A model generated the notes under the pieces. It was not told the DNA's origin and ran no database searches. It saw only the letters and a list, made by a program, of their open reading frames with translations. From positions 161,528 through 225,527 of the IMG/VR virus record IMGVR_UViG_3300028569_002417: DNA of 64,000 nucleotides. One strand, given 5' to 3'. A program made the translations under genes and the position numbers. Below, piece by piece: positions 26,309 through 53,210 of the stretch (the stretch's first letter is position 1; each line of letters begins with the position of its first letter).

Positions 26309-29107
26309 ATGTCAAGTAAATTCTTTCACGGCTCAAGTCTTCTACTTGGTGATAACACCGTTCCCGGTGTTCAATTATCAAAAGAACTTAAAGAGTATAT
26401 CCCTGTAATTCTTAAAGCCTGCCGTGATTGGGGACTCGATTTCTATCCAACCGTTGTTCAACTTCTGACATATGATGAGATCAGCGAAATTGCCGCCTAT
26501 GGTGGTTTCCCAGTCCGCTTCCCACATTGGTCCTTCGGAATGGAATACGAAGAACTTCAACGTGGATATGAATTCGGTGGCCATAAAATATACGAAATGG
26601 TAGTGAATACAGATCCCTGTTATATCTATAATCTTAGTTCTAATACTCTTGCTGATCACTTGACTGTAGTCGCACATGCAACTGGTCATAATGATTTTTT
26701 CAAAAACAATATTCACTTCAGCGCCACTGATACGAATATGTTAAATAAAATGGCGAACCATGGGACCAGAATTCGCAATTACATGGCCAGATGGGGTAAG
26801 GAAAGGGTAACTGAGTTTCTTGATCATGTCATGAGACTCGAAACCCTTATAGATGGATCTGATGCTTGGACAGAAAAAGTTGTCAAAGATAAAAACATCT
26901 ATGACGAAAGAAAATATCATAAAGCCCGCAGACTTACTGTTGATCGTGAACGCATGTATATGGAACCATTTTTGAACACGCCTGAATTCAGGCAAAAAGA
27001 AAATCAAAAGGTTCATGATAAAGATATTGCTGATGAAATTGGTTTGTTTAAGAATCCAACTAAGAACATTCTTGGATACATTCGAGACAATGCTCCACTG
27101 AAGCCTTGGCAAGCAGATATTGTTTCGATGTTGTACGAAGAGGCTATTTATTTCTTCCCACAGAGGCAAACTAAGACTTTGAACGAAGGATGGGCCTGTG
27201 GGAAAAGGGATACTCTTGTTTGTAGTGATTTGGGTATTTTGACTTTAGGAGAAATAGTTGACAATAGAATGCCAGTCACCATTTATGATGGAGAACAAGA
27301 AAGAAAAGTTACGAATTGGTTTACTTTTGAAAATCGAGATGTGTATCGCATAGAGACTCGTCGTGGATATGTTTTTGAGGGGTCTAACAATCATCGCATC
27401 ATGGGCAGTGATGATTGGATTCGTCTGGATGGAATGTCAGTTGGACAGTCATTGAAGTTGTCTTATTCGGATATTTGGTCAAATGAATTGCAAGAAATTA
27501 CTTATGAATTACCAGAAAAAAGAATTGAACTTGATGAGATTGCCGAAATGGCATCTGTTACAAAATATCAAGTAAGTTATAGGAAATATCATTACAAAGG
27601 TGAAGAAAAAAATGATGTTTTAGGAAATCTGATTCAAGAATATGATAATCAAAAAACTACTTTCATGCGAAATAAGAGGAACATGATTAGTGTTCCTGAG
27701 TATATGAGTGAAGACTTTGCTTCATTTGTTGGGTATATGATTGGTGATGGACATATTTCCCTAGTGAAAAGAACTATGGGTTTGACATCTGGGGACAAAT
27801 CACAAATTGATCATTATGCTACTTTGCTGAAAGATTTATTTGGATTGGAATGTAAGATAAGATGGGATGGATCATCGAAAAATGGCAGGTATAGGGCTTC
27901 GATTAGCTCTAAAGATTTAGAACAACTTCTTATTCATCTTGGCATGAAAACAGGAGTTTGTGCTAGAATTAAAAATATACCAGAAATTATATTGAAGTCG
28001 CCAAAGAATGTTGTTGCGGCATTTATCAGATCTTATTTTGACTGTGATGGTTATGCTGGAAATGCAGGAGTCATACTCTCCACATCGAGCGATAGTATGT
28101 CTCGACAAATCCAGAATGTGCTTTTGAATTTCAAGATTTTGTCAACAAGAAGAAAGCAAAAGGATTCATGTTGGCATATTCGGATTACTGGTTCAGAAGC
28201 GGTTAAATTTGAAGAACAAATTGGATTTAATCTTCAAAGAAAACAAGATAAATTAAGAAAATATATTTCTGATCACAAATGGTTTGTGGAACAGAAGCTT
28301 GAAGATGAGATTGTTTCTGTTGAAAAAACTGGCACAGACACAGTTTATGATATTACAGTTGAAACAAGTCATCGATATTCATCTTGCGGATTTATAAATC
28401 ATAACAGCACCGTAGATTCTGTTATCATGGCAGAGAACGGGCATATCAGTCTTGGTCAAAATTCTGATGATTGTGGTATTATTGAATATTCTAATCACAA
28501 GATGGGAGTTCTTGGCGGTAAATACAGCATGAATCCCTATAAGATGGGATATTATTTGCTTAATGACATTCGTGAGCGTTGGGACAAAGGTCAGTTTGGA
28601 GAAGAGTGGGAAGAGTGTAACGATATCCACAAAAAAGAAAACTGGAACATCCAAACAAATAAGGGTAAAGAAAAGATTTTTGAAGTCAGGAAGTTTTATG
28701 ATGATTTGACATTTATCCATGAATTTTTCACTGAGGATTTTTGTCGCAAGCAAGAGTATTTCCATTGGAAATATTATCCCAATGGTGAATACAGGTTGGA
28801 TAGTCGAGATTATCAGGTAATCAAAAAGAATCTTATGGCTAGGCATATCAATGGTGGATTGCCATCAATTAAATTGATGGAGCCCAATTATGCTGGTCGT
28901 GGGATTATGATGTTGCAGCATGAGTCTGATGGTCGAAGTCTTTACGATCCTTATATCGGTGACGTTCTTCAATCATTAAGAGCCATTTGGGGCAATGATA
29001 TCATTCTTGCCACAGCTGATGATAACGGCAAGGAAAAAATTTATTGGCAGAGATCAGCAATATTAGAGATCATGGATCGAAGCCGTCTTTCTAAACATCT
29101 TGATTAG
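26309..29107 (+). CDS. spoVR: SpoVR/YcgB-family protein containing an intein
   Basis: GFPVRFPHWSFG, KIYEMVVN, AHATGHNDFFKNN, YFFPQRQTKTLNEGWA, NPYKMG. Confidence 0.93.
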   Translation: MSSKFFHGSSLLLGDNTVPGVQLSKELKEYIPVILKACRDWGLDFYPTVVQLLTYDEISEIAAYGGFPVRFPHWSFGMEYEELQRGYEFGGHKIYEMVVNTDPCYIYNLSSNTLADHLTVVAHATGHNDFFKNNIHFSATDTNMLNKMANHGTRIRNYMARWGKERVTEFLDHVMRLETLIDGSDAWTEKVVKDKNIYDERKYHKARRLTVDRERMYMEPFLNTPEFRQKENQKVHDKDIADEIGLFKNPTKNILGYIRDNAPLKPWQADIVSMLYEEAIYFFPQRQTKTLNEGWACGKRDTLVCSDLGILTLGEIVDNRMPVTIYDGEQERKVTNWFTFENRDVYRIETRRGYVFEGSNNHRIMGSDDWIRLDGMSVGQSLKLSYSDIWSNELQEITYELPEKRIELDEIAEMASVTKYQVSYRKYHYKGEEKNDVLGNLIQEYDNQKTTFMRNKRNMISVPEYMSEDFASFVGYMIGDGHISLVKRTMGLTSGDKSQIDHYATLLKDLFGLECKIRWDGSSKNGRYRASISSKDLEQLLIHLGMKTGVCARIKNIPEIILKSPKNVVAAFIRSYFDCDGYAGNAGVILSTSSDSMSRQIQNVLLNFKILSTRRKQKDSCWHIRITGSEAVKFEEQIGFNLQRKQDKLRKYISDHKWFVEQKLEDEIVSVEKTGTDTVYDITVETSHRYSSCGFINHNSTVDSVIMAENGHISLGQNSDDCGIIEYSNHKMGVLGGKYSMNPYKMGYYLLNDIRERWDKGQFGEEWEECNDIHKKENWNIQTNKGKEKIFEVRKFYDDLTFIHEFFTEDFCRKQEYFHWKYYPNGEYRLDSRDYQVIKKNLMARHINGGLPSIKLMEPNYAGRGIMMLQHESDGRSLYDPYIGDVLQSLRAIWGNDIILATADDNGKEKIYWQRSAILEIMDRSRLSKHLD
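27197..28405 (+). mobile_element. Intein (403 aa) with LAGLIDADG homing endonuclease in SpoVR
   Basis: NEGWA|CGKRDTLV ... VYDITVETSHRYSSCGFINHN|S; FVGYMIGDG and FIRSYFDCDG motifs. Confidence 0.92.
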
Positions 29108-29972: not shown

Positions 29973-30240
29973 AAAAAATCAACTAGGTTATTACGAACCT
30001 TGTATTCACTTGTCTGCTTTTGTCTTAGGTGTAAGTTTAATTATTTCACCTAATGGTCTTTTTTATTCTTGCGCTAATCTTGTCGCTTGTTTCTTTGTCT
30101 TATCTTTCTATTGGTGTCTTTGCCTCATTCATTGGGGCCAAGACAGAGATTGGCGAAATACATTTTATATAAGCTTGGTTTGGCTTGCCAATTTAATCTT
30201 ACAAGGCTATCACGCTTATATGTTGTCTAAACCTTATTGA
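29965..30240 (+). CDS. Small membrane protein
   Basis: Three hydrophobic segments. Confidence 0.55.
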   Translation: MSEKNQLGYYEPCIHLSAFVLGVSLIISPNGLFYSCANLVACFFVLSFYWCLCLIHWGQDRDWRNTFYISLVWLANLILQGYHAYMLSKPY

Positions 30241-30259
30241 TTATTACCAGTTGATCATG

Positions 30260-30291
30260 AATGCCTAGAAATTATTTTCTAGGCATTTTTT
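30260..30291 (+). terminator. Intrinsic terminator upstream of cas12i
   Basis: aatgcctagaaa / tttctaggcatt plus T run. Confidence 0.75.
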
Positions 30292-30292: not shown

Positions 30293-30321
30293 TTTACAAA
30301 AAAATAAAAGTGTTGTACACT
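30293..30321 (+). promoter_or_regulatory. Sigma70-like promoter of cas12i
   Basis: TTTACA (30293-30298), 17 nt, TACACT (30316-30321); same boxes at 52716-52744. Confidence 0.65.
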
Positions 30322-30362
30322 GCTCAGTAGAAATCCGCCACAAGGGCTACAGGAGCAGTGTC

Positions 30363-33300
30363 ATGGTCAGCGATAGCACTATTCGTCCTTATGCCAGCAA
30401 ATTGGCACCAAATGATCCTAAGCTGAAAATGCTTAACGATACATTCAATTGGCTAGACCATGCATACAAGGTATTCTTTGATGTATCAGTAGCACTTTTT
30501 GGTGCTATTGAACATGAAACTGCTCAAGAATTGATAGGTGAAAAAAGTAAATTCGACGCAGATCTAATCTGTGCTATCATGTGGTTTCGCCTAGAAGAAA
30601 AATCCGATAACCCCGGACCTCTCCAAACAGTAGAACAAAGAATGAGACTGTTCCAGAAATACTCTGGACACGAACCATCTTCTTTCACACAAGAATACAT
30701 CAAAGGAAACATAGATTCAGAAAAATATGAATGGGTAGATTGTCGTCTCAAATTTATAGACTTAGCTAGAAATATTAACACAACCCAAGAATCACTCAAA
30801 ATTGATGCATACACTCTTTTCATGAATAAATTAATTCCTGTAAGCAAAGATGATGAATTCAACGCTTATGGCTTGATTTCACAACTTTTTGGAACAGGAA
30901 AGAAAGAAGACAGATCAATCAAAGCAGCAATGCTTGAAGAAATCTCAAATATTCTCGCAGACAAAAAGCCAGATACTTGGGAAGAATATCATGATTTAAT
31001 TAAAAAAAATTTCAATGTTGATAATTACAAAGAACTTAAAGAAAAATTAAGCGCAGGAAGCAGTGGCCGTGATAGTTCTCTAGTAATTGACCTCAAAGAA
31101 GAAAAAACAGGACTACTTCAACCTAACTTTATCAAAAATCGTATTGTTAAATTCAGAGAAGATGCTGATAAAAAGAAAACTGTATTTTTATTGCCCAATA
31201 GAATGAAATTGAGAGAATTTATTGCTTCACAAATTGGACCATTTGAACAAAATAGCTGGTCAGCTGTTCTAAACAGGTCTATGGCTGCAATTCAATCTAA
31301 AAATAGCAGCAACATTCTATACACTAATGAAAAAGAAGAACGTAATAATGAAATTCAGGAATTGTTAAAAAAAGACATCTTGTCAGCAGCAAGTATATTA
31401 GGCGATTTTCGTCGTGGAGAATTTAACAGATCAGTGGTTTCAAAAAACCACTTGGGAGCAAGACTCAATGAGCTTTTTGAAATATGGCAAGACTTAACAA
31501 TGGATGATGGCATTAGAAAATATGTTGATCTTTGTAAAGATAAGTTTTCCAGAAGACCTGTAAAGGCATTGCTTCAATACATTTATCCATATTTCGATAA
31601 AATTACTGCAAAGCAATTCCTTGATGCAGCTAGTTACAACACACTTGTTGAAACCAATAATCGTAAGAAGATTCATCCAACTGTCACAGGACCAACAGTT
31701 TGTAATTGGGGGCCTAAGTCTACAATTAATGGATCAATAACACCACCAAATCAAATGGTCAAAGGAAGACCAGCAGGATCTCATGGAATGATCTGGGTCA
31801 CAATGACAGTCATAGATAATGGACGTTGGATCAAGCATCACCTTCCATTCTATAACTCACGCTATTATGAAGAACACTATTGCTACAGAGAAGGTCTGCC
31901 TACAAAAAATCAACCTCGTACTAAACAACTTGGAACTCAAGTAGGATCAACAATTTCTGCCACAAGTCTTGCTGCTCTTAAATCTCAAGAAGAGCAAGAC
32001 AGAAGGAATGATCGTAAAAATCGATTCAAAGCCCATAAATCTATCATCAGATCACAAGAGAACATTGAATATAATGTTGCTTTTGATAAGTCAACTAATT
32101 TTGATGTAACACGAAAAAATGGTGAGTTTTTCATCACTATCTCTTCTAGAGTTGCTACTCCAAAATATAGTTATAAATTAAATATTGGCGATATGATCAT
32201 GGGACTGGATAATAACCAAACAGCCCCATGCACATATTCAATTTGGCGTGTAGTGGAAAAAGATACAGAAGGTAGCTTCTTTCATAATAAAATTTGGCTT
32301 CAATTGGTAACTGACGGGAAAATAACAAGCATTGTTGACAATAACCGTCAAGTCGATCAGCTTTCTTATGCTGGCATCGAATACTCCAATTTTGCAGAAT
32401 GGAGAAAAGATCGTCGCCAATTCCTTCGATCAATTAACGAAGATTACGTTAAAAAATCAGATAATTGGCGTAATATGAATCTTTATCAATGGAATGCTGA
32501 ATATTCTCGTTTGCTTCTTGATGTCATGAAAGAAAATAAGGGCAAAAATATTCAAAATACATTCCGTGCAGAAATAGAAGAATTAATTTGTGGTAAGTTC
32601 GGTATAAGATTGGGAAGTCTTTTTCATCATTCACTCCAATTTCTTACTAATTGTAAGAGTCTTATATCATCTTACTTTATGCTTAACAATAAAAAAGAAG
32701 AGTATGATCAAGAGTTGTTTGACAGTGATTTCTTTAGGTTGATGAAAAGTATTGGGGACAAACGTGTTAGGAAACGCAAAGAGAAATCCTCAAGGATTTC
32801 ATCTACAGTATTGCAAATTGCAAGGGAAAATAATATCAAGTCTTTGTGTGTTGAAGGTGATTTACCTACAGCCACAAAGAAGACTAAGCCAAAACAAAAT
32901 CAAAAATCAATAGATTGGTGCGCCCGTGCTGTTGTCAAAAAATTGAATGATGGCTGTAAGGTATTGGGAATTAATTTACAGGCCATTGATCCAAGAGACA
33001 CAAGTCACTTAGATCCATTTGTTTATTATGGAAAGAAATCTACTAAAGTTGGAAAAGAAGCTCGATATACAATTGTTGAGCCATCCAATATAAAGGAATA
33101 CATGACAAATAGATTCGATGACTGGCATCGAGGGGTTACCAAAAAGTCAAAAAAGGGTGATGTTCAAACAAGCACTACTGTTCTTCTTTATCAAGAAGCT
33201 TTAAGGCAATTTGCTAGTCATTACGAACTTGATTTTGACTCTTTGCCAAAAATGAAATTCTATGATTTGGCTAAAAGATTGGGAGATCATGAAAAAGTGA

Positions 33301-33503
33301 TTATCCCTTGTCGTGGAGGAAGAGCTTATCTGTCTACTTATCCAGTGACAAAAGATTCCTCGAAAATAACTTTCAATGGTAGAGAAAGATGGTATAATGA
33401 ATCAGATGTGGTAGCTGCTGTTAACATCGTGCTGAGAGGCATAAGAGATGAAGACGAGCAGCCTGATGATGCCAAAAAACAGGCACTCGCTCGCACAAAG
33501 TAA
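30363..33503 (+). CDS. cas12i: Type V-I CRISPR effector Cas12i (1046 aa)
   Basis: AGGAG RBS then MVSDSTIRPY; LFQKYSGHEPS, FGTGKK, RuvC I IMGLDNN, RuvC II LCVEGDL, DWCARAV, TSHLDPFV, RGGRAYL, RuvC III SDVVAAVNI; adjacent array with AGAAATCCGTC..TTGACGG handle. Confidence 0.93.
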   Translation: MVSDSTIRPYASKLAPNDPKLKMLNDTFNWLDHAYKVFFDVSVALFGAIEHETAQELIGEKSKFDADLICAIMWFRLEEKSDNPGPLQTVEQRMRLFQKYSGHEPSSFTQEYIKGNIDSEKYEWVDCRLKFIDLARNINTTQESLKIDAYTLFMNKLIPVSKDDEFNAYGLISQLFGTGKKEDRSIKAAMLEEISNILADKKPDTWEEYHDLIKKNFNVDNYKELKEKLSAGSSGRDSSLVIDLKEEKTGLLQPNFIKNRIVKFREDADKKKTVFLLPNRMKLREFIASQIGPFEQNSWSAVLNRSMAAIQSKNSSNILYTNEKEERNNEIQELLKKDILSAASILGDFRRGEFNRSVVSKNHLGARLNELFEIWQDLTMDDGIRKYVDLCKDKFSRRPVKALLQYIYPYFDKITAKQFLDAASYNTLVETNNRKKIHPTVTGPTVCNWGPKSTINGSITPPNQMVKGRPAGSHGMIWVTMTVIDNGRWIKHHLPFYNSRYYEEHYCYREGLPTKNQPRTKQLGTQVGSTISATSLAALKSQEEQDRRNDRKNRFKAHKSIIRSQENIEYNVAFDKSTNFDVTRKNGEFFITISSRVATPKYSYKLNIGDMIMGLDNNQTAPCTYSIWRVVEKDTEGSFFHNKIWLQLVTDGKITSIVDNNRQVDQLSYAGIEYSNFAEWRKDRRQFLRSINEDYVKKSDNWRNMNLYQWNAEYSRLLLDVMKENKGKNIQNTFRAEIEELICGKFGIRLGSLFHHSLQFLTNCKSLISSYFMLNNKKEEYDQELFDSDFFRLMKSIGDKRVRKRKEKSSRISSTVLQIARENNIKSLCVEGDLPTATKKTKPKQNQKSIDWCARAVVKKLNDGCKVLGINLQAIDPRDTSHLDPFVYYGKKSTKVGKEARYTIVEPSNIKEYMTNRFDDWHRGVTKKSKKGDVQTSTTVLLYQEALRQFASHYELDFDSLPKMKFYDLAKRLGDHEKVIIPCRGGRAYLSTYPVTKDSSKITFNGRERWYNESDVVAAVNIVLRGIRDEDEQPDDAKKQALARTK

Positions 33504-33630
33504 GTCCTTGTCTTCAAAAGACTTACGAAATTTGCTCTTTGACAAGTAGGTTATTCTCATGTGGGTTAAGCATAACCTCTCGCTAATTGGATCGTAAGTC
33601 CTTACTCAGTATGGTATTGTGGGACAAGCC

Positions 33631-34554
33631 CCCACAATACCTGAGAAATCCGTCCTTCGTTGACGGTGCAATCCATCATGCATAATATAATTTTCATCGC
33701 TTCCCACAATACCTGAGAAATCCGTCCTTCGTTGACGGACCTATTGCTCGCCTGCCAGTGCCTTTCCCAGCGAGTTCCCACAATACCTGAGAAATCCGTC
33801 CTACGTTGACGGCGATGAAAATATACTATGTTATGCAGAAGATTTTATCCCACAATACCTGAGAAATCCGTCCTACGTTGACGGCTATGAGTAATTTTGA
33901 AGCTACAGATAGTTTTCCATACCCACCCACAATACCTGAGAAATCCGTCCTACGTTGACGGTCAAGTAATTCGATGCGTGTTTTATTTGTTTGAACCACC
34001 CACAATACCTGAGAAATCCGTCCTACGTTGACGGCTCCATCGAGACTTGTCGGCCCCACAATACCTGAGAAATCCGTCCTACGTTGACGGCTTGGGCAGT
34101 CCCGAAGGGTCTAACTGCAAAACGCTACCCACAATACCTAAGAAATCCGTCCTACGTTGACGGGGACTAGAGGCGCAGCAGGCTGAAGTTGAAGCTTATG
34201 CCCACAATACCTGAGAAATCCGTCCTCCGTTGACGGCCTGAGCCATGCCGCCAGTTGCTTGGCTTTAGAATTCCCACAATACCTGAGAAATCCGTCCTAC
34301 GTTGACGGGGTTGGAAGAAAAGAAGGGACGATCTTTTTGTTTTGTCCCACAATACCTGAGAAATCCGTCCTACGTTGACGGTGCGATTCAAAAGAGAATG
34401 TTGGGCTTGGCCAGTGGGCCCCACAATACCTGAGAAATCCGTCCTACGTTGATGGGCCGTGTTCTCGATGACGACCCACAATACCTGAGAAATCCGTCCT
34501 GCGTTGACGGAATGAGGTGACCTTCGTAAAGGTAGGCCCACAACACCCAAGAAA
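33631..34554 (+). CRISPR. CRISPR array: 13 full 36-nt repeats, 1 truncated terminal repeat, 13 spacers
   Basis: Consensus CCCACAATACCTGAGAAATCCGTCCTACGTTGACGG starting at 33631, 33703, 33777, 33849, 33926, 33999, 34055, 34128, 34201, 34273, 34346, 34420, 34475; degenerate at 34537. Spacer lengths 36,38,36,41,37,20,37,37,36,37,38,19,26. Confidence 0.98.
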
Positions 34555-34567
34555 GAAGAGGTAAAAG

Positions 34568-35042: not shown

Positions 35043-36457
35043 GTGGAGATAGTCGGTTTTGAACATCTTCACTTGCACTAGTTTACTCCGATTTTTCTGT
35101 ATTAGATGGTTTTGGATCTGTAGAAGAGTATTGTGTTCGTGCTCCTCAGATCAATCAAAAGTTTTTAACAATTAGCGATCACGGTATGATGGGAGCAATT
35201 CCACGTCAGATTCGTGGATGTGAAAAAATTAATGACAAGTATGGCAAAGACACTCTTAGCCCCATATTTGCAGTCGAACTGTATATGAATCGTCTTCAGC
35301 CTGAGATGACAGAGCAGGACGAAGGAAAGAAAATATATTCAAGTCTGACAGAAGAAGAGCAAAGCGAATTTAAGTCTAGCAGTCATTTGCTCGCTATTGC
35401 CTACAGCAACGAAGGATATAAGAATCTTGTTCGTCTTTCTAGTTGGGGCTGGACAAAGGGATTTTATCGTCGCCCAAGAGTCAACTACGAACAATTACTG
35501 AAATATAAAGAAGGAATTATTTTCACAAGTTGTTGTTATGCCAGTGAGATTGGAAGAGCATTTGACAAAGGTGGAGAAGAAGCTGGATTCGCTATGGTCG
35601 AGCGTTATGTTGAAATGTTCGGCAAAGAACATTTCTATCTCGAAATAATGCTTTTGGATTTCAAAAAGCAAAAACCATATGATGAATTTATTGTAAAAGC
35701 AAAGGAAAAGTATGGTCTTAAAATCATACTCACAAATGATTGCCATTATTGCAACAAAGAAGATAGTCAATATCAGAGACTTATGTTGATGATGCAGACT
35801 AATCGTACTATTGCCGAAATTGAAAAGGCAATGAAGGAAGATTCAAATCAAGATTTCTTTGAGTTGCAGGATGCGAATCTTTGGATGAAGAGCGAAGAGG
35901 AATTGAATGATAAGTGGTTGAGTGATTATCAAGATTCAATTCCTTATGAGATTTTTTGCGAGGCCAAGAGGACAACTGTTGATATTTGCAAAAAGGCAAA
36001 GGGAGTTCAGCTTGATCGTAGTTTGAAATTACCATTTATTCCCGATGGTGATGAAAAATTGAGGGAAGAAATCATGATTGGTTTCCAAAAAAGGAAGCTC
36101 CCAAAGACAAGGGAATATCTTGATAGAATCAAGGAAGAATACAGTCTTATCATCAGGAAGGGATTTACGAGTTACTTTTTGATTCAAAAGATGATGACAG
36201 ATGAGGCTCGTAGAGTCTGTCGTGATTTGCTTGGATTTGGTGACGGCTCACAGGCTGTTGGTCCCGCTAGAGGCTCAGCAGCAGGTTCACTTATTTGCTA
36301 TTGTCTAGGCATCACTAGTGTCGATCCTGTGCGTGAAGGCTTACTCTTCAGTCGTTTCATGAGTGAAGCTCGTGGAGGAAGAAGCTTGCAGTTAGAATTC
36401 AAGAATATCGATCCTCTTCCACTAGAGGAGTTGGAATTGAGGCAGTCGGGGTTGTGA
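35043..36457 (+). CDS. dnaE: DNA polymerase III alpha, N-terminal PHP part; frame interrupted by 8 nt at 35079-35086
   Basis: AGGAGG + GTG gives MEIVGFEHLHLH, stop; second frame SDFSVLDG..ISDHG..HLLAIA..EGYKNL..TNDCHY..RGSAAGSLICYCLGIT..LLFSRF. Confidence 0.88.
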
Positions 36458-36462
36458 ATAAG

Positions 36463-37080
36463 TCAAGCATTGATTGCAGTGATGTCAGCTTCTTTTTCTG
36501 GTTCTGGAGAAACAGGTTCTTCTATGCAGCCCCTGTAACTTATTTGACCCTCTACTTCTCTTGTTTTATCTGTCATTTGTCTTGAATTTTCTCTTGCTAG
36601 ATCAGCTTGATATGTTGCTTCGTCATCGTTCGGAATTAGTATGCTGTGTGGAAGCCCAGACAACATTGTGTTAATGAGGTTTGAAACTTTTGTAAATAGT
36701 TCTTTTTCCATGAAAAGTTTTTGGCAAATTGTGATTTGTCTTCTTGTTGTTGCTTCACTTATTGAATCTCTTACTTCATCATAATTCATAAGACGATGTC
36801 TCATCATGTTGATGAAAACAGTTTTTGAGTTTGAAAAACCTCTTTCTCTGCCTCTCATTTCTGCTTCTAGTTCTTTTACATATTGTTCTTTGCTTTCTCT
36901 TTCAATGTTTTTTATAGAGAAAAATCGTTTATCTCTTTTACCACTTGATTTCATCGCACCTATGATGACCATTTCAAGCTTTGGAAAAGATACAACTTTT
37001 GTTCTTGTTGCTGCTTCAAAGAGAAACTGATTGCATTCAAGTATTTCTCTTTCAACAAGCCATTCAATGAATGAAAACAT
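36463..37080 (-). CDS. Hypothetical protein, capsid-targeting-like N-terminus
   Basis: MFSFIEWLVERE. Confidence 0.6.
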   Translation of the reverse strand: MFSFIEWLVEREILECNQFLFEAATRTKVVSFPKLEMVIIGAMKSSGKRDKRFFSIKNIERESKEQYVKELEAEMRGRERGFSNSKTVFINMMRHRLMNYDEVRDSISEATTRRQITICQKLFMEKELFTKVSNLINTMLSGLPHSILIPNDDEATYQADLARENSRQMTDKTREVEGQISYRGCIEEPVSPEPEKEADITAINA

Positions 37081-37105
37081 ATTTTACCTTTTTTAGAAAC
37101 TTTAA

Positions 37106-37912
37106 TTATTTATGCATGGTTGACAACAGTTTTTGAGGACAAACTTTATTATTTATTGTTATAATTTGATAATTATCTGGGTTGCAGCAAGGAATGGTAG
37201 ATGGTTCATAATCCATAATTTCAGGGACGTTAAATATAAATTTAACTATATCTTTCTGCCAACTTATTCTTTCACGAACTTTAGTTTCATCTGGATAAAG
37301 AAGAGTCATTCTTGGATGGTTAATAGAACCAGCATAATGGCTTGTTCCTGTATCGCATCCAACATAGTATTTTGATTTTTGAATATATTTGAATGTTGTG
37401 TGGATATCATCACTATAAACAACATTCTTGTCATTCAAAGGAAATAAATTTTTCTTTTCCGAATCGATCACACAGATTGTATCTTTGAATTTAGATTTAA
37501 GTGCGTAAAATAATTCTTGTGGGTTATTTATTGCTCTGGGAGTATTGTATTCAGGTGAAAGACAAGGTATGAAAACACAGTCATACTGAATTTCTGATTC
37601 ATTATATTTATATTGGCTTTCTGTGTAAAAGCCATTTTTCGACAGAAAAGGCGACCAAATCCATAAGTTTATGAAATTAACATTTGGATTTGAATTGATG
37701 TTATCAGGCAAGAAACGAACAAGATTGTCTGGAAACAATGATAATGCTGATATATGTGTGTTTGAATCTTTGTAGTCAATATTTATATTTTTTGATTTGA
37801 TGTATTTGTACAAAGCAGTACATTGAATTTCATCTCCAATCCTATTGGTGTAATTGGATTGGTAGATTGAATGACTGACAGAATCCCAGATTTCTTTGAA
37901 TTTATTAAACAT
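37106..37912 (-). CDS. GT9-like (heptosyltransferase-type) glycosyltransferase
   Basis: RIGDEI, YYVGCDTGTSHYAG. Confidence 0.65.
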   Translation of the reverse strand: MFNKFKEIWDSVSHSIYQSNYTNRIGDEIQCTALYKYIKSKNINIDYKDSNTHISALSLFPDNLVRFLPDNINSNPNVNFINLWIWSPFLSKNGFYTESQYKYNESEIQYDCVFIPCLSPEYNTPRAINNPQELFYALKSKFKDTICVIDSEKKNLFPLNDKNVVYSDDIHTTFKYIQKSKYYVGCDTGTSHYAGSINHPRMTLLYPDETKVRERISWQKDIVKFIFNVPEIMDYEPSTIPCCNPDNYQIITINNKVCPQKLLSTMHK

Positions 37913-37922
37913 ATAAAAAAAA

Positions 37923-37948
37923 TTAAGGGGAGAAAAATCTCCCCTTAA
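37923..37948. terminator. Hairpin, probable terminator on minus strand
   Basis: ttaaggggaga / tctccccttaa with A run on left. Confidence 0.6.
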
Positions 37949-37972
37949 CAATTGAGTTATGATTATTTATTT

Positions 37973-38893
37973 TCACTCATCTTCATCTTCATCTTCATCT
38001 TCATCTTCATCTTCATCTTCATCTTCATCTTCATCTTCATCTTCATCTTCATCTTCATCTTCATCTTCATCTTCATCTTCATCTTCGTCTTCTTCTTCAT
38101 CTTCGTCTTCGTCTTCATCTTCATCTTCATCTTCATCTTCATCTTCATCTTCATCTTCATCTTCATCTTCATCTTCATCTTCATCTTCATCTTCATCTTC
38201 GTCTTCATCTTCGTCTTCGTCTTCATCTTCATCTTCGTCTTCATTTGAAGCTATTTCAAAGATTGATTGGTTGAGTTTACGATTGAAGGATTCGTTGGTG
38301 GCAACTAGTGTTGCGATTGTTTCTATTGCTTCTGGCTGTTGTGACATGGTTAGCAAGAAAGCTTCAAAAAGACCTGTGCGCTTCATTTGGAGAACTGCGT
38401 CAAGGATATACTTTTCGTTTTCTTCGCAAACAGAGATTGCCTCTTTGATTGCTTCGTAGGCATGAGAAGGGTTGACGCTAAGACCAGCAAGTCTTTCGTT
38501 ACGAACCTTTTTTGTGAATTCGGCAAGGCTTAGTCTTTTGTTGCTATCAAGCCATTCTTGAGTCGTTTTGACATGAGGATAGCTACCTTTTTCTTTTGGT
38601 TCTTCGCCATGTGCTTTGGTTGGCATTTTTTCATAACCTTTGCCACCTTTATGACCAAGACCGTCAGAACCGAATCCTTTGTTGCGGTCAGCAGCATCTT
38701 TTCCGCCCTTGTAGGGAGAAACGCTACCGCTTTGGCTTTTGCCACCTGCATTTTTAGGGGTTTTGCCAAGACTTGGTGCTGTTGGTGTTGGGCCTTCATA
38801 ATCTGCTACGATATCGACTCTTGCTTTTTGTCCTTTGTCGTGAGCCTTTTTTCTCATTGACTCAACATAGGACTGAAAATTTTGGTTTACCAT
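37973..38893 (-). CDS. Protein with 89-residue Asp/Glu C-terminal tract
   Basis: GGAG RBS, MVNQNFQSYVES; (ED)n tail. Confidence 0.7.
   Translation of the reverse strand: MVNQNFQSYVESMRKKAHDKGQKARVDIVADYEGPTPTAPSLGKTPKNAGGKSQSGSVSPYKGGKDAADRNKGFGSDGLGHKGGKGYEKMPTKAHGEEPKEKGSYPHVKTTQEWLDSNKRLSLAEFTKKVRNERLAGLSVNPSHAYEAIKEAISVCEENEKYILDAVLQMKRTGLFEAFLLTMSQQPEAIETIATLVATNESFNRKLNQSIFEIASNEDEDEDEDEDEDEDEDEDEDEDEDEDEDEDEDEDEDEDEDEDEDEDEDEEEDEDEDEDEDEDEDEDEDEDEDEDEDEDEDEDEDEDEDE
37976..38242 (-). repeat. Hexanucleotide microsatellite (GAAGAT)n encoding (ED)n
   Basis: Directly visible; occasional GAC variants and one EEE. Confidence 0.97.
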
Positions 38894-38972
38894 TTTTTCT
38901 CCGTTTGCGTAAAACAACCTGTTAATCTATATAATCAATTAAAATTAAAAAAAACGTACTAAATAAAATTAC

Positions 38973-39324
38973 GGGGCCGTATTTAGAATTCGATTCGGAT
39001 GGACGGCTTGTGAGTGGCATGTAGAGGTTGGTCAGAAGGCCTCTTAAAAAATCTGACTAAAGCCTTAACTGGCGAAACTGTTTACGCTATGGCTGCATAA
39101 GTGCAACCACAGACTTAGGTAGCGATGCTAGTAGCGACCGAAAGTTTGATGTAAAATCTGGCTGGTCATATGCATTTCAATGGGCAAATGACGAGATAAA
39201 GTTGATAGTGCTGAAAAAGGTTTTATTTGTTGTACCTTTTCAGATGACATCAAGCAATAAAATAAACATGTAGAGGCTCACAGGTAGTTATGCGAAGACA
39301 GCGGGGCGGGTCCGCTCGGCTCCA
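38973..39324 (+). ncRNA. ssrA: tmRNA; tag peptide (A)GETVYAMAA
   Basis: 5' GGGGCCG pairs with 3' CGGCTCC-A including G3-U; ATTCGA motif; TAACT-GGC resume codon 39071, stop 39098-39100; 352 nt. Confidence 0.9.
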
Positions 39325-39370
39325 CTTGCCATGAAGACCTCTTGTTCATAAAATAGAACAAGGGGTCTTT

Positions 39371-40591
39371 ATGCTTATTTCTATTTTCACGCCAACTCAT
39401 AATACAAAATATCTTAATCGTTTATATCAAACCATAAAAAATCAAACTTACCAGCAATGGGAATGGATTATTTGTCCCAATAATGGTGCTGTTGTTGATA
39501 TTAAGGATGATCCTAGAGTTAAGGTTTTTCCAACAAACGGCTCTACCAATATTGGTTATTTGAAGAAATATGCTGCGAGTAAGTGTAAGGGCGAAGCAAT
39601 CATGGAAGTTGACCATGATGATGAGCTTTTTCCTAATGCTGTTGAGGAATGTGCAAAGGCATTTGAAGATTCGACTGTTGATTTTGCATATTCAAATTGC
39701 TGTGACGTGCAGGAAAATTATGAGCCAAGATTTTTTAATGAGAAATTTGGCTGGGTAAACAGACCATGTGTTTATGATGGTCGTAATCTTGTTGAGATGG
39801 TTGCATTTCCTCCTGATCCTGCGAGTATAAGCAAGATTTGGTATGCTCCCAACCATTTTAGATCTTGGCGCAAATCATTTTATGATCGTATTGGTGGTCA
39901 CGATGAGAGCATGGATGTTCTTGATGATCAAGATATAATGTGTAGAACTTATATTCATGGCAAGATGTTTCATATTGACAAGCCATTATATGTTTATCAT
40001 TTGCATCCAGAAAACACTTGTTATGGCGAAAAGAATGCTAAGATTCAGGAATTGTGCGTTGAATTGCATGACAAATACATTTACAAACTTGTTGAAAAGT
40101 GGTGTGATGTCAACAATTTGAGAAAAATTGATTTATGTGGTGGATTTAGCAGGCCAATTGGATATGAAAGTGTCGATCTTGAAGGTGCTGATATTACTGC
40201 TGATTTGAATGAGCGTTGGCCTTTTGAAGATGGAAGTGTTGGTGTTTTTAGGGCTCATGATGCTCTTGAACATTTGAAAAATCCTATTCACGCTATGAAA
40301 GAAGCATATCGTTGTCTTGCTCCTAATGGTTGGTTTTTAACATTAACTCCAAGTACTGATGGTCGTGGTGCTTTCCAAGATCCTACTCACATTTCTTTTT
40401 GGAACAGCAATAGTTTTTGGTATTATACAAAAGCAGAGCAGGCCAAATATATTGGCACTCCTGTTAAGTTTCAGTTGAATAGGATCAAGAATTTTTATCC
40501 AAGTGATTGGCATAAGTTTCATCAGATTTTGTATGTAAAAGCAGATTTGCTGAAATTTTCTGGTCGTGTTGCAGGTGGGGTTGAGATTTAA
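39371..40591 (+). CDS. GT2 glycosyltransferase fused to SAM-methyltransferase-like domain
   Basis: ISIFTPTHN, EVDHDD, IGGHDE; IDLCGG, ADLNERWPF, HDALEHL, AFQDPTH. Confidence 0.85.
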   Translation: MLISIFTPTHNTKYLNRLYQTIKNQTYQQWEWIICPNNGAVVDIKDDPRVKVFPTNGSTNIGYLKKYAASKCKGEAIMEVDHDDELFPNAVEECAKAFEDSTVDFAYSNCCDVQENYEPRFFNEKFGWVNRPCVYDGRNLVEMVAFPPDPASISKIWYAPNHFRSWRKSFYDRIGGHDESMDVLDDQDIMCRTYIHGKMFHIDKPLYVYHLHPENTCYGEKNAKIQELCVELHDKYIYKLVEKWCDVNNLRKIDLCGGFSRPIGYESVDLEGADITADLNERWPFEDGSVGVFRAHDALEHLKNPIHAMKEAYRCLAPNGWFLTLTPSTDGRGAFQDPTHISFWNSNSFWYYTKAEQAKYIGTPVKFQLNRIKNFYPSDWHKFHQILYVKADLLKFSGRVAGGVEI

Positions 40592-40670
40592 TGATGGATG
40601 TTGTTTTTTCACATGAATATGGCGGGGAAATAGTCTTGTTTTGAGGATTGTTTCTTTGTATTATCGGGTG

Positions 40671-41990
40671 ATGAGCAAGCAAAGATTCCTAGATGTTTGT
40701 GTCGCTTCTCTTCGTGCAAAGGGTTTGTACGAAGAGCAGCGTTATGCCAAAAGATTGAAGTGGGAAACAGAAGAGATCATTGCGAAGGAAAAGCACGAAT
40801 ATTTCCTTGATTTGTATGATAAGAAGGTGAAGTATCCTAAAAATCAAAACAATCTTTTGGTTTGTTGGCTTTTAGGTTTAGTTCCAGATCATGACATTGA
40901 GAAAGATCCTTCAAATGTATTCACGGGTGACTTGCCCGATGTAGACATTGATTATATTCCAATGGTTCGTGATTATTTGAAGAATGAATGGGCACCGAAA
41001 ACATTTGGCGAAGATTATGTTTGTAACATTGGTAACTATACGACATTTGGAATTAAATCGGCATTGATTGACATGGCTCGTGTTCATGGCGAAAGTCGTG
41101 AAGAGGTCATGGCAATCACTAAGAATCTTGATGCTAAGGATGATGAAGGCAAACCAATCACATGGGATGCAGCATTAAGGCTTGACCCTGAATTCAAAGC
41201 ATATACTGAGAAATATCCGTCAATTGCTCAAGCAACAAAAAAATTAATTAATCGCAATCGTGGCATGGGAGTACATGCTGGTGGATTGATTGTTTCGAGA
41301 ATTCCACTTCATGATCTTGTTCCTTTGGTTAAAAGGAAAGGTAATCCTCAAGCTAGTGCATGGGTAGAGGGACTACATGGGCAGGATTTGCAGCCTGTTG
41401 GCCTTGTTAAATTTGACTTACTTGTGATTAGTAATCTTTTGCAAATTGCTCGTTGTTGCGAGACTGTTAGAATCAATCATGGTGTTACTTCAATTTGTGC
41501 CAAGCCCGGAGAGCCAGATTGGTCTGATGTTGATTGTTGGAGGAATGATCCTGATTCAATTGCAATGGCTAATCGTGGTGATTTGAAATGTATATTTCAA
41601 TTTGATTCTGAGGGAATGAGGGCATTGGTTAGGGCTGGAGGAGTTGATCGATTTGAAGATTTAGTGGCATATTCCAGTTTATTCCGACCCGGCTGTATTA
41701 AATGTTTGCAAAAAGATTCTTTTGTTATGTTATACAATGGTCAAAAAGAAATAAAAAATTTGCAGCCGGGCCTTGATAATATAGCGTATCTAAATTCTCA
41801 AAGAAAAGTAAATTACACAAAAAGATATTTTGTCATAAATTCTGGTTATAAAAAAATATTGAGAATCACAACTAAAAGTGGCAAAGTCTTGCTTCTCTCG
41901 CCTGATCATCCAGTCTTGACTGATAAATTGAAATATATAAAGGCAGGAGTTCTTAAAATTGGAGATAAAGTTGGAGTAATTAAAAAATAA
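40671..41990 (+). CDS. dnaE: DnaE middle part (catalytic palm) ending in N-intein
   Basis: LPDVDIDY, GVHAGGL, GLVKFDLL, IFQFDSEG, LFRPG then intein block A. Confidence 0.92.
   Translation: MSKQRFLDVCVASLRAKGLYEEQRYAKRLKWETEEIIAKEKHEYFLDLYDKKVKYPKNQNNLLVCWLLGLVPDHDIEKDPSNVFTGDLPDVDIDYIPMVRDYLKNEWAPKTFGEDYVCNIGNYTTFGIKSALIDMARVHGESREEVMAITKNLDAKDDEGKPITWDAALRLDPEFKAYTEKYPSIAQATKKLINRNRGMGVHAGGLIVSRIPLHDLVPLVKRKGNPQASAWVEGLHGQDLQPVGLVKFDLLVISNLLQIARCCETVRINHGVTSICAKPGEPDWSDVDCWRNDPDSIAMANRGDLKCIFQFDSEGMRALVRAGGVDRFEDLVAYSSLFRPGCIKCLQKDSFVMLYNGQKEIKNLQPGLDNIAYLNSQRKVNYTKRYFVINSGYKKILRITTKSGKVLLLSPDHPVLTDKLKYIKAGVLKIGDKVGVIKK
41703..41987 (+). mobile_element. Split intein N-half (95 aa)
   Basis: CLQKDSFV (block A), GKVLLLSPDHPVLT (block B), LKIGDKV then stop. 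Confidence 0.88.
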
Positions 41991-51386: not shown

Positions 51387-51877
51387 AATTCAAAGAACCT
51401 CTGAAAATTGTTCCAGTTGCTGATATCCCTAAGGCAAAAGATGTTCCTCTTGAAAGCCTTATGGATATATTCCGTCTTTGCACAAAGATGGAAAAAATTT
51501 GCGATGAAAATGATGGAATAGGTTTATCAGCAGTTCAAGTTGGAGTTCCATGGAATCTTTTCATTGTTAAGCGCAATCGTCATTTTGAATATTATGTCAA
51601 TTGCGAGTATACAGGCCATGGAGACAAGATAAAGTCAGTTGAGGGCTGCTTGTCTCTTAGGAATGAGGATGGCACTTTTAGAAGGTTTGAGGTTGAGAGA
51701 TTTTCTAAGACACGAATAAAAGGCAAGCAACTTGTTGTTTCAGGGATGCCTTCTCTTGTTTTGAATGATGTTGATCGTGAAGAGATTAATCTTTTCAGTA
51801 TTGTTTTTCAGCATGAATGCGATCACAGTCGAGATGTACTCGTTTCGCAAATAGGTCGTGAGGTGGAATTGGCCTAA
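51383..51877 (+). CDS. def: Peptide deformylase
   Basis: GIGLSAVQVG, EGCLS, QHECDH. Confidence 0.92.
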   Translation: MKFKEPLKIVPVADIPKAKDVPLESLMDIFRLCTKMEKICDENDGIGLSAVQVGVPWNLFIVKRNRHFEYYVNCEYTGHGDKIKSVEGCLSLRNEDGTFRRFEVERFSKTRIKGKQLVVSGMPSLVLNDVDREEINLFSIVFQHECDHSRDVLVSQIGREVELA

Positions 51878-51903
51878 GAAATCCGTCTTCCGTTAAAGGA
51901 CGG
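51873..51903 (+). repeat. Solitary degenerate Cas12i repeat
   Basis: CCTAAGAAATCCGTC-TTCCGTTAAAG-GACGG; first 15 nt identical to part of array repeat 8; CCGTC/GACGG stem intact. Confidence 0.7.
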
Positions 51904-52715: not shown

Positions 52716-52744
52716 TTTACAAGTGGGGAATTTCTTTGTACACT
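52716..52744 (+). promoter_or_regulatory. Sigma70-like promoter, same boxes as cas12i promoter
   Basis: TTTACA (52716-52721), 17 nt, TACACT (52739-52744). Confidence 0.65.
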
Positions 52745-52747
52745 ATG

Positions 52748-52773
52748 CTGAGAAATCCGTTTCATGTTGACGG
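52748..52773 (+). repeat. Solitary Cas12i repeat handle (crRNA-like leader)
   Basis: CTGAGAAATCCGTTTCATGTTGACGG vs array CTGAGAAATCCGTCCTACGTTGACGG: 22/26 identical, same length, stem kept by a U-G pair. Confidence 0.85.
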
Positions 52774-52799
52774 ATGATCAACCCGCTGGAGGATTTGGC

Positions 52800-53210
52800 G
52801 TGGCTCAAGGCAAGGATGTTTTTTTCTTTGGTGATGAATTTGATGATGAAAATTCATCAAGTGAAAGCGCACAGATTGCAAATGAATTTAAGCAGAATGC
52901 TAATTCATTAGTTGTACATCATTTGTCAAATTACTTCAAGGACAAGATGTTGCACACAGGAGGAAATGTTCCTGATCAATTACTAAATAGTCATAAAAGA
53001 ATATCTATGGTTTTGAACTACACTGTTTCTAATGGTGTAGATCATGCTCATGAAAGACTAGAATTTTCTGAGGGGAGAAACAATGATGATGAGAATTCAG
53101 AGCTTATCGTCACTGTTCTTCATGGAATAGCCAAAAGTGGTGTTCCGAAGGAATTTGCTGGTGGTATGCTTTGTCTGCACTTGGAATTAATAGAAGGGAT
53201 AGATTTTTGA
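52800..53210 (+). CDS. Hypothetical acidic protein
   Basis: GGAGGA 52788-52793 then GTG (MAQGKDVFFFG). Confidence 0.6.
   Translation: MAQGKDVFFFGDEFDDENSSSESAQIANEFKQNANSLVVHHLSNYFKDKMLHTGGNVPDQLLNSHKRISMVLNYTVSNGVDHAHERLEFSEGRNNDDENSELIVTVLHGIAKSGVPKEFAGGMLCLHLELIEGIDF

What the first reader, a model, noticed from the sequence alone, without database searches (positions are those of the whole stretch)
30293..30365. cas12i mRNA appears to start with the crRNA 5' handle sequence
TTGTACACTgctcagtAGAAATCCG matches TTGTACACTatgctgAGAAATCCG at 52736-52759, both after TTTACA at 17-nt spacing. The transcript would begin near AGAAAUCCG like mature crRNA, but only a weak GCC/GGC stem follows. It may be a low-affinity site for feedback control.
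Basis: partly seen in the sequence, partly recalled or inferred. Interest (0 to 1): 0.65.

Follow-up and report, generated by a model that had tools for sequence, protein, structure and literature searches.

The report
crRNA-handle mimic leading phage cas12i mRNA
In a huge phage that carries its own Cas12i CRISPR system, the cas12i messenger is predicted to begin with the first nine bases of the system's own guide-RNA handle. This looks like a worn-down copy of a full handle-like hairpin found at the same spot in two relatives, so it may let the protein throttle its own synthesis, but nothing has been tested.

Summary
TTTACA-N17-TACACT-N6/7-AGAAATCCG occurs twice in 64 kb (30293-30337 and 52716-52759) and in none of 100 shuffles. 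AGAAATCCG is the first nine bases of the mature handle of the adjacent 13-repeat array. The ORF (ATG 30363) is a Cas12i2 homologue.

The comparator site (52751-52773) is not the array. It is a complete solitary repeat fused to a promoter. A third fused unit lies elsewhere on the same phage contig, and a fourth solitary unit, with no promoter, sits at 51877.

The cas12i leader itself keeps only the 5' tail plus three stem bases. A handle covariance model scores it 9.2 bits, which is chance level genome-wide. However, it aligns with the leaders of two 44%-identical cas12i genes that carry the whole hairpin, ending 0-1 nt before the ribosome-binding site.

My reading is a truncated solitary repeat in the cas12i 5' UTR. 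It most plausibly is, or was, a cis site for Cas12i feedback on translation.

Against this: 91%-identical relatives lack it, the TSS is only predicted, and a strong dyad (30317-30361) hints at other control.

I class it as a new variant of the known repeat-like elements found next to cas genes. Confidence 0.42.

The parts
30259..30288 (+). Intrinsic terminator (13-bp stem, T run) that ends the upstream PrkA/DUF444/SpoVR gene block. cas12i therefore needs its own promoter.
   Evidence: for the upstream genes
30293..30321 (+). Predicted cas12i promoter: -35 TTTACA (30293-30298), 17-nt spacer, -10 TACACT (30316-30321) preceded by TTG.
   Evidence: A homologous arrangement (TTTACA-N16-TATACT) lies in front of cas12i in L018.
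30329..30337 (+). AGAAATCCG, identical to positions -23 to -15 of the mature crRNA handle. The predicted transcription start is A30329.
   Evidence: handle numbering from PMC7567891. The TSS is inferred from 7 nt between the -10 and the A.
30337..30347 (+). Remnant of the handle hairpin: a 3-bp GCC/GGC stem with a 5-nt loop. The true handle has 5 bp and a 7-nt loop.
   Evidence: The alignment to the L004 hairpin is AATCCGcCACA versus AATCCGtCACA.
30351..30365 (+). Shine-Dalgarno AGGAG (30351-30355) and ATG (30363-30365). They lie where the first ~15 nt of a guide would lie if the leader were a crRNA.
   Evidence: coordinates counted from A30329 = position 1
30363..33503 (+). cas12i (1046 aa), a Cas12i2 homologue.
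   Evidence: 6ltp E 1e-101, full length; for the family
30317..30361 (+). Extended dyad ACACTGCTC..GTAG / CTAC..GAGCAGTGT that spans the -10, the handle mimic and the SD. It is unexplained.
   Evidence: as RNA -21.5 kcal/mol, z -3.7, 0 of 200 shuffles. The 5' arm lies upstream of the predicted TSS.
33631..34567 (+). CRISPR array of 13 repeats of 36 nt (3' 23 nt = handle AGAAATCCGTCCTACGTTGACGG) plus a degenerate terminal repeat at 34538-34567.
52716..52802 (+). Site C. It has the same promoter hexamers (52716-52744) and then a complete solitary handle at 52751-52773 (19 of 23 identical, same 5-bp stem and 7-nt loop). SD GGAGGA 52788-52793 and GTG 52800 of an unknown ORF lie in the spacer position.
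   Evidence: (24.4 bits, E 0.0076)
51877..51903 (+). Site B. A solitary handle-like hairpin (7-bp stem) inserted between the def stop codon and the next ORF (ATG 51921). It has no promoter of its own.
   Evidence: 20.8 bits, E 0.038; absent from this junction in four related phages
30235..30261 (-). Candidate partial target of the site C pseudo-spacer: PAM TTC plus a 9-nt seed ATGATCAAC, 35 nt upstream of the -35. This is a weak lead only.

Best explanation
The start of the cas12i transcript is a truncated solitary CRISPR repeat unit fused to the gene's own promoter. Shown: cas12i follows a strong terminator and the only sigma-70-like promoter there. The promoter's geometry puts +1 on the A of AGAAATCCG, which is the exact 6-nt 5' tail plus the first three stem bases of this system's mature crRNA handle. 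The same promoter-plus-handle design occurs at two complete solitary repeats in this phage. The leader aligns with the cas12i leaders of two distant relatives, where the full handle-like hairpin ends 0-1 nt before the ribosome-binding site. Inferred: Cas12i recognises this leader as it recognises a crRNA handle. The Shine-Dalgarno sequence and AUG occupy the place of the first guide nucleotides, so bound protein would hinder the ribosome. That gives negative feedback on Cas12i synthesis, which real crRNAs would relieve by competing for the protein. In this phage the 3' half of the hairpin is lost. Any binding must therefore be weak (a damped feedback), or the element is decaying into a relic.
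For: Composite motif present twice and never in shuffles. 9-mer enrichment 16 against 0.6 expected. Terminator followed by promoter. Cas12i2 homology. Processing residues H492/H493 invariant across the family. The 5' tail is read base-specifically, A(-23)/G(-22)/A(-21) are critical, and the mature 5' end is at A(-23) (PMC7567891). L004 leader has AATCCGTC-N7-GACGG followed at once by CAGGAG (model 11.5 bits). L017 leader has AGAAATgCCGTT-N6-AACGGC then AGGAG (7.9 bits, E 0.02 in 102 nt). The stem differs between L004 and L017 by a compensatory C-G to U-A change. The window leader aligns to L004 (local p 0.007-0.015) and L004 to L017 (p 0.0025). A hairpin 7-25 nt before the start codon is present in 6 of 10 cas12i lineages against 13% of other ORFs. 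Sites C and D are complete handles with a promoter placed 6 nt upstream.
Against: The handle model scores the window site 9.2 bits (E 7.2 over the window), and six chance hits score as well or better. Only a 3-bp stem remains. Cas12i loci that are 91% identical (L003, L005, L049) have a diverged leader without the motif and with a shortened -35/-10 spacing. The hairpins in L018, L011 and L019 are not recognisably handle-like to the model. The lineages are related, so the 6 of 10 count shows conservation rather than independent origin. The TSS is predicted, not measured. The dyad at 30317-30361 suggests a different or additional mechanism. No binding or expression data exist.
Confidence: 0.42

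Rival explanations
1. Relic, or a promoter feature only. The nine bases are what is left of an ancestral solitary repeat in the leader, or of a duplicated promoter-repeat module such as site C. They now serve at most as an initial transcribed sequence, and Cas12i does not bind them usefully.
For: Hairpin half lost. Model score at chance level. Closest relatives have lost the motif altogether yet keep cas12i and a large array. Solitary repeats can arise as insertions, for example site B.
Against: The nine bases are exact while the flanks have diverged, and they sit exactly at the predicted +1. The part retained is the part Cas12i2 reads base-specifically. The same hexamers and +1 block are kept at site C although the 14 nt between them are unrelated, which looks like selection on the blocks.
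Confidence: 0.3
2. The real regulator is the dyad at 30317-30361. Either it forms an RNA hairpin that buries the Shine-Dalgarno sequence in transcripts starting upstream of 30317 (terminator read-through or another TSS), or it is a DNA operator over the -10 and +1. On this reading the handle-like bases merely lie in its apical part.
For: 30313-30368 folds at -21.5 kcal/mol, z -3.7, with 0 of 200 shuffles as stable. From 30329 on, the leader is unstructured. SD-burying outer helices also appear in the L011 and L017 leaders. In L052 the cas12i promoter sits inside a 15-bp palindrome.
Against: The 5' arm overlaps the -10 and lies upstream of the predicted TSS. No alternative promoter was found between the terminator and 30317. 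The dyad is absent from site C and from the 91% relatives. It does not explain the exact identity to the crRNA tail.
Confidence: 0.13
3. CreR/crlRNA-type transcriptional control in trans. The complete solitary unit C makes a crRNA-like RNA that guides Cas12i, through partial complementarity, to DNA next to the cas12i promoter. The shared promoter merely co-expresses the two.
For: C's pseudo-spacer has its best PAM-flanked seed match in the whole window (9 nt, PAM TTC) at 30250-30261, 35 nt upstream of the -35. Fewer than 14 bp of pairing does not activate Cas12i2 cleavage. CreR RNAs do exactly this for Cas12a (10.1101/2023.03.10.532045).
Against: The seed is only 9 nt and its motif ATGATCA is over-represented, so the post hoc P is about 0.003. 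The site lies beyond the terminator hairpin and not on the -35, the -10 or the +1. No pseudo-spacer or array spacer matches the promoter itself. This model leaves the handle bases on the cas12i mRNA unexplained.
Confidence: 0.07
4. RNA anti-CRISPR (Racr-like) decoys. The promoter-fused repeats, possibly including the cas12i leader, soak up the Cas12i of competing phages.
For: Viral solitary repeats immediately downstream of promoters are the hallmark of Racrs (PMC10651486). Solitary exact handles occur in several other IMG/VR phage contigs, twice per contig in three of them.
Against: This phage encodes the cognate Cas12i and array, so decoys would also blunt its own system. The cas12i leader lacks the hairpin that a decoy needs. 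Racrs are described as not associated with cas genes.
Confidence: 0.05

Closest known systems
Standalone repeat-like sequences (SRUs) next to cas12a in type V-A loci (Shmakov et al. 2023, PMC10120712)
   Same: A repeat-derived element sits just upstream of a single-effector cas12 gene. There is no second repeat and no evident targeting pattern, similarity to the repeat is low, and the proposed role is to bind and modulate the cognate effector.
   Different: This case is type V-I and phage-encoded. The element lies inside the 5' UTR, fused to the promoter so that +1 coincides with the mature crRNA 5' end, and it abuts the ribosome-binding site. Only 9 nt match, below that study's 16-bp criterion. 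That paper does not mention V-I or Cas12i.
CreR / crlRNA autorepression of Cas12a (Liu et al., 10.1101/2023.03.10.532045)
   Same: A degenerate repeat with the crRNA 5' handle is linked to a feedback loop that would sense the crRNA pool by competition for the effector.
   Different: CreR is a separate small RNA whose pseudo-spacer pairs with a PAM-flanked site at the cas promoter, which gives transcriptional repression. Here no such pairing to the promoter was found, and the mimic is part of the cas mRNA itself, which implies action in cis on translation.
Viral solitary repeat units / RNA anti-CRISPRs (Racr; Camara-Wilpert et al. 2023, PMC10651486)
   Same: Solitary repeats in a phage genome lie immediately downstream of predicted promoters and mimic the handle. 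Sites C and D fit this picture.
   Different: Racrs act against a host system and are not linked to cas genes. Here the phage owns the cognate Cas12i and array, and one module drives cas12i itself.
tracr-L autoregulation of Cas9 (Workman et al. 2021, cited in PMC10120712)
   Same: A natural guide-like RNA from the cas locus feeds back on cas expression.
   Different: tracr-L guides Cas9 to promoter DNA. There is no tracrRNA in V-I systems and no DNA target is evident here. This comparison rests on my own knowledge plus the citation seen.
Translational operators that mimic a protein's primary RNA site (ribosomal-protein operons, MS2 coat protein operator, T4 RegA)
   Same: The proposed logic is the same: an RNA-binding protein represses its own mRNA through a weaker copy of its normal RNA ligand placed at the ribosome-binding site.
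   Different: The proteins and RNAs are unrelated, and no Cas effector is known to me to work this way. This is an analogy from general knowledge, not tested here.

Membership tests
Type V-I CRISPR-Cas (Cas12i) | Effector homologous to Cas12i over its full length | tested here: met
   phmmer against PDB: Cas12i2 6ltp E 1e-101 over residues 4-1036; Cas12i1 E 1e-65
Type V-I CRISPR-Cas (Cas12i) | Array whose repeat 3' part forms the 23-nt handle (6-nt tail plus hairpin), transcribed with the effector; pre-crRNA processing residues present | tested here: met
   13 repeats with handle AGAAATCCGTCCTACGTTGACGG on the + strand. H492/H493 (His485/His486 of Cas12i2) are invariant in the family alignments, and the Lys18 equivalent aligns.
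Standalone repeat-like sequence / SRU adjacent to a cas gene (Shmakov 2023) | Match of at least 16 bp to the cognate repeat, outside the array, within the cas locus | tested here: not met
   Site A shares only 9 contiguous bases and scores 9.2 bits. Homologous leaders in L004 and L017 come closer, with 13 of 16 conserved handle positions.
Standalone repeat-like sequence / SRU adjacent to a cas gene (Shmakov 2023) | Position in the intergenic region directly upstream of the effector gene, same strand | tested here: met
   30329-30337, 26 nt before the ATG on the + strand
CreR / crlRNA (Cas-regulating RNA) | Pseudo-repeat that keeps the handle sequence and hairpin of the crRNA | tested here: not met
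   For site A only the tail and a 3-bp stem remain. Sites C and D do meet this feature.
CreR / crlRNA (Cas-regulating RNA) | Pseudo-spacer partially complementary to a PAM-flanked site in or beside the cas promoter | tested here: inconclusive
   No match from site A, site B, site D or any array spacer. Site C has a 9-nt seed with PAM TTC 35 nt upstream of the -35, post hoc P about 0.003.
Racr (RNA anti-CRISPR) | Solitary repeat in a viral genome immediately downstream of a promoter | tested here: met
   Predicted promoters end 6-7 nt before the handle at A, C and D. The window is phage-like: DNA polymerase and PolIII-alpha genes split by intein/endonuclease inserts, peptide deformylase and a tmRNA, on IMG/VR contigs of 168-225 kb.
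Racr (RNA anti-CRISPR) | Not associated with cas genes; inhibits a CRISPR-Cas system | tested here: not met
   The element heads cas12i, and the phage carries the cognate array. Inhibition cannot be tested with these tools.
Autogenous translational operator (mimic of the protein's RNA ligand at the RBS) | Mimic overlaps or abuts the Shine-Dalgarno sequence or start codon | tested here: met
   The SD starts 14 nt after the 9-mer in the window. In L004 the SD follows the hairpin at once, and in L017 it overlaps the hairpin's last base.
Autogenous translational operator (mimic of the protein's RNA ligand at the RBS) | The protein binds the mimic and lowers its own translation | not testable with these tools
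   Needs binding assays and reporter fusions.

The most novel reading that the evidence does not exclude
Cas12i acts as an RNA-binding translational autorepressor. A crRNA-handle mimic in the 5' UTR of its own mRNA puts the ribosome-binding site where a guide would sit, so free Cas12i shuts off its own synthesis and crRNA abundance re-opens it. In this huge phage the same trick, a promoter fused so that the transcript is born with a mature crRNA 5' end, defines a small set of Cas12i-addressed transcripts: cas12i, the ORF at 52800, and unit D. A processing site also lies exactly on the stop codon of def.
Probability: 0.25. Interest if true: 0.75.

Novelty: new variant of a known kind. Interest (0 to 1): 0.55.

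Why it matters
How Cas effector levels are matched to the crRNA pool is known for a few systems: tracr-L for Cas9, and CreR for types I-B, I-E and V-A. All of these are transcriptional and act through DNA targeting. A handle mimic built into the effector's own mRNA next to the ribosome-binding site would be a different, post-transcriptional solution. It would also be the first such circuit proposed for type V-I and for a phage-borne CRISPR system. The papers I could search on repeat-like elements, CreR, Racr and viral crlRNAs never mention Cas12i. Cas12i2 is an engineered genome editor, so a natural RNA that titrates or self-limits it could be of practical use. The finding also exposes several promoter-fused solitary repeats in a phage that owns the cognate effector, a situation the Racr model does not cover. 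If the element is only a relic, the result is a modest note on how solitary repeats arise and decay.

Tried and rejected
1. Self-targets. No array spacer or pseudo-spacer has more than chance 11-mers elsewhere in the window.

2. CreR-type pairing to the cas12i promoter. All TTN sites were scanned for 18 guides. Only the weak site C seed was found, and it is kept as a minor rival.

3. Solitary repeat plus downstream sequence as a guide against repeat-less alleles in rival phages (a homing-like idea). At site B the repeat-less def junctions of four related phages do not contain the pseudo-spacer seed, so I rejected this for B. It was not tested for C or D.

4. Objective detection of handle likeness in all cas12i leaders with a covariance model. 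This succeeded only for L004, L017 and, weakly, the window. It failed for L018 and L019, so I do not claim those hairpins are handle mimics.

5. Wider locus collection. Broad protein alignments were too diverse for the search for related loci. IMG/VR holds only this phage and one other Cas12i contig among those queried. P0002 had no retrievable DNA.

6. Function of the genes behind sites B and C. No Pfam or PHROG family was found.

7. Rfam. Nothing in the region; the only hit in the window is a tmRNA.

8. An alternative promoter that would transcribe the whole dyad. None was found.
Full report
CONTEXT. The window is part of a huge phage. It carries a PrkA/DUF444/SpoVR block (22.6-29.1 kb), DNA polymerase and PolIII-alpha genes split by intein/endonuclease inserts (the SpoVR gene also carries an intein), a peptide deformylase and a tmRNA. 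It is identical to two IMG/VR contigs of 168 and 225 kb. The ORF at 30363-33503 is a full-length Cas12i2 homologue (6ltp, E 1e-101). Downstream lies an array of 13 repeats of 36 nt at 33631-34510, plus a degenerate terminal repeat. The last 23 nt of each repeat (AGAAATCCGTCCTACGTTGACGG) have the form of the mature Cas12i2 handle, a 6-nt 5' tail plus hairpin. In Cas12i2 the pre-crRNA is cut just before A(-23). A(-23), G(-22) and A(-21) are critical, and the tail is read base-specifically (PMC7567891). The catalytic histidines are invariant in this family (H492/H493).

A 13-bp terminator (30259-30288) is followed at once by TTTACA (30293), 17 nt, TACACT (30316-30321), 7 nt, then AGAAATCCG (30329-30337), AGGAG (30351-30355) and ATG (30363). 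The same hexamers, the same spacing and the same 9-mer recur at 52716-52759. The composite pattern matches only these two places and none of 100 shuffles. The 9-mer occurs 16 times against 0.6 expected: 13 array copies plus three solitary ones. The 14 nt between the -35 and TTGTACACT are unrelated in the two copies, so only the functional blocks are shared. With 6 or 7 nt between the -10 and the A, both transcripts are predicted to start on A(-23). This is an inference; no TSS data exist. The leader has only a 3-bp remnant of the hairpin.

WHAT THE COMPARATOR IS. Site C (52751-52773) is a complete solitary repeat unit. It is 19 of 23 identical to the handle, has the same 5-bp stem and 7-nt loop, and scores 24.4 bits (E 0.0076) with a handle covariance model built from the array repeats of five loci. 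It lies in a divergent intergenic region. The SD and GTG (52788-52802) of an unknown ORF fall in what would be the spacer. Site B (51877-51903; 20.8 bits) is a handle-like hairpin inserted between def and the next ORF, and it is absent from that junction in four related phages. A further unit, D, lies elsewhere on the same contig (L034 4605-4627; 32.3 bits). It again has a promoter (TTGATT-17-TATGAT) ending 6 nt before A(-23). So this phage repeatedly fuses promoters to solitary handles, a pattern already noted for viral solitary repeats (PMC10651486).

IS SITE A A HANDLE? By itself, no. The model gives 9.2 bits (E 7.2 over the window), with six chance hits as good or better. The case rests on position and homology.

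I collected cas12i leaders from ten further loci, giving ten distinct lineages when the window is counted. In L004 (44% identity, same PrkA/DUF444/SpoVR synteny), the leader holds AATCCGTC-N7-GACGG followed directly by CAGGAG and the ATG. It scores 11.5 bits, roughly E 0.004 if scaled to a 100-nt search space. In L017 (44% identity), the leader holds AGAAATgCCGTT-N6-AACGGC and then AGGAG (7.9 bits, E 0.02 in 102 nt). Its stem differs from that of L004 by a compensatory C-G to U-A change.

The window leader aligns with L004 (AATCCGcCACA against AATCCGtCACA, then the shared CAGGAG). Local-alignment p is 0.007-0.015 against shuffles, and L004 against L017 gives p 0.0025. These three leaders are therefore one homologous element, complete in two lineages and truncated in the window.

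L018 and L011 share a different hairpin at the same place (p 0.001, with one compensatory pair), and L019 has another. The model does not recognise any of these as handle-like, so I count them only as positionally equivalent structure. Overall, 6 of 10 lineages have a qualifying hairpin 7-25 nt before the start codon, against 13% of other ORFs and 7% of random positions. Because the lineages are related, this shows conservation, not independent origins. The L018 promoter (TTTACA-N16-TATACT) aligns with the window's, which supports the promoter call.

EVIDENCE AGAINST. Three loci with 91%-identical Cas12i (L003, L005, L049) share a leader in which the tail reads CGTAAC, the -35/-10 spacing is 11 nt, and no hairpin exists. 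They nonetheless keep a 29-repeat array. The element is thus dispensable in the nearest relatives.

Second, 30317-30361 is an extended dyad (9-bp arms plus inner pairs). As RNA it folds at -21.5 kcal/mol (z -3.7, 0 of 200 shuffles) and would bury the SD, whereas the leader from 30329 onward is unstructured. Its 5' arm overlaps the -10. It can therefore act only in read-through or alternative-start transcripts, or on DNA. I could not resolve this.

MECHANISM. Shown: the geometry, the identity to the crRNA tail, and the homology to full hairpins adjoining the SD. Inferred: Cas12i binds the leader as a handle. Because the SD and AUG lie where the first guide nucleotides would be held, binding hinders initiation, giving autogenous feedback that crRNAs relieve by competition. 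In this phage the site would be weak or vestigial. I put 0.42 on this reading, 0.30 on a functionless relic, 0.13 on the dyad as the real regulator, 0.07 on CreR-like control by site C RNA, and 0.05 on Racr-like decoys. The CreR-like case rests on a 9-nt seed with PAM TTC at 30250-30261, 35 nt upstream of the -35, with post hoc P of about 0.003.

COMPARISON WITH KNOWN SYSTEMS. Repeat-like sequences upstream of cas12a occur in 34-49% of V-A loci, with unknown function (PMC10120712). CreR RNAs repress P_cas12a through partial pairing. Racrs are promoter-fused viral solitary repeats. Site A fails the 16-bp criterion for a repeat-like sequence, fails the CreR hairpin and target criteria, and is cas-linked, unlike Racrs. 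It therefore works like these elements rather than belonging to any one of them. None of these papers mentions V-I or Cas12i, and no paper in the searchable library links Cas12i with solitary repeats, crlRNA, CreR or Racr.

VERDICT. This is a real, non-random feature. It is best read as a truncated solitary repeat at the 5' end of the cas12i mRNA, a new variant of the known repeat-like regulatory elements. Its function is unproven.

Noticed in passing
window 52716-52802: Site C is a complete solitary Cas12i handle fused to a promoter identical in its hexamers to that of cas12i. The SD and GTG of an unknown 136-aa ORF lie in the spacer position, and a divergent lipoprotein gene starts near 52699 on the minus strand.
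   Followed up: partly
window 51877-51903: Site B is a handle-like hairpin inserted between def and the next ORF, absent from four related phages. A(-23) is the third base of the def stop codon, so Cas12i-type processing would clip the stop codon. The phage also encodes a tmRNA.
   Followed up: partly
L034 4570-4627 (same phage contig, outside the window): Site D has TTGATT-17-TATGAT, then 6 nt, then a handle 21 of 23 identical to the repeat. It is antisense to the 3' end of an MscL-like ORF. A weaker unit lies at L034 9606-9628.
   Followed up: partly
window 33611-33643: The last bases of the leader are the reverse complement of the first 11-13 nt of repeat 1, forming a leader-repeat hairpin. 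Leaders of L011 and L018 show the same arrangement with changed sequence, and all three share GCTCTTTGACAAGTAGGT further upstream. A leader-repeat hairpin was recently described for Cas13 arrays (PMC13187072).
   Followed up: no
window 34035-34054 and 34456-34474: Two spacers are only 20 and 19 nt long among 36-41-nt spacers. The repeat before the second one carries a stem mutation (GATGG).
   Followed up: no
window 33667-33702 and 33813-33848: Spacers 1 and 3 overlap as near reverse complements over about 17 nt, so they target the same region of some element on opposite strands, in slightly different alleles.
   Followed up: no
window 30317-30361: An extended dyad spans the -10, the handle mimic and the SD. 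It is highly stable as RNA (z -3.7), but its 5' arm lies upstream of the predicted TSS.
   Followed up: partly
window 30235-30261 (minus strand): The best PAM-flanked seed match of site C's pseudo-spacer in the whole window (9 nt, PAM TTC) lies between the upstream ORF's stop codon and the terminator, 35 nt from the -35 of the cas12i promoter.
   Followed up: partly
window 34568 and 51921: Two ORFs share the opening ATGTTAAGTCT. Each lies directly after a repeat-like element (the degenerate terminal repeat, and site B). This may be a trace of recombination with the array end.
   Followed up: no
L019 3938-7040; L004/L014 (whole 23-kb contig): Syntenic phages keep cas12i between the SpoVR block and the CxxCxxCC/PolIII genes but have no array beside it. 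In L004 there is none on the whole 23-kb contig, and the leader hairpin is the only handle-like element seen.
   Followed up: partly
L024/L029, L027/L030, L028/L031, L025: Other IMG/VR phage contigs carry solitary exact handles, two per contig in three near-identical contigs. L025 has the exact Cas12i2 handle loop. About ten chance hits are expected for this pattern in the collection, so single hits such as L026 (inside an ORF) may be chance.
   Followed up: partly
L052 2925-2965: In a 35%-identical locus the cas12i promoter (TTTACA-17-TATAAT) lies inside a 15-bp palindrome, which looks like an operator. Its leader has AGAGAAT, the tail of its own handle type, 5 nt before the ATG.
   Followed up: no
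window 38973-39327: A phage-encoded tmRNA (Rfam RF00023, 100 bits).
   Followed up: no
window 26309-29107 and 35186-45560: An intein with a LAGLIDADG domain lies inside SpoVR. The PolIII-alpha and DNA polymerase genes are split or interrupted, and an HNH-like ORF sits between the polymerase parts.
   Followed up: no
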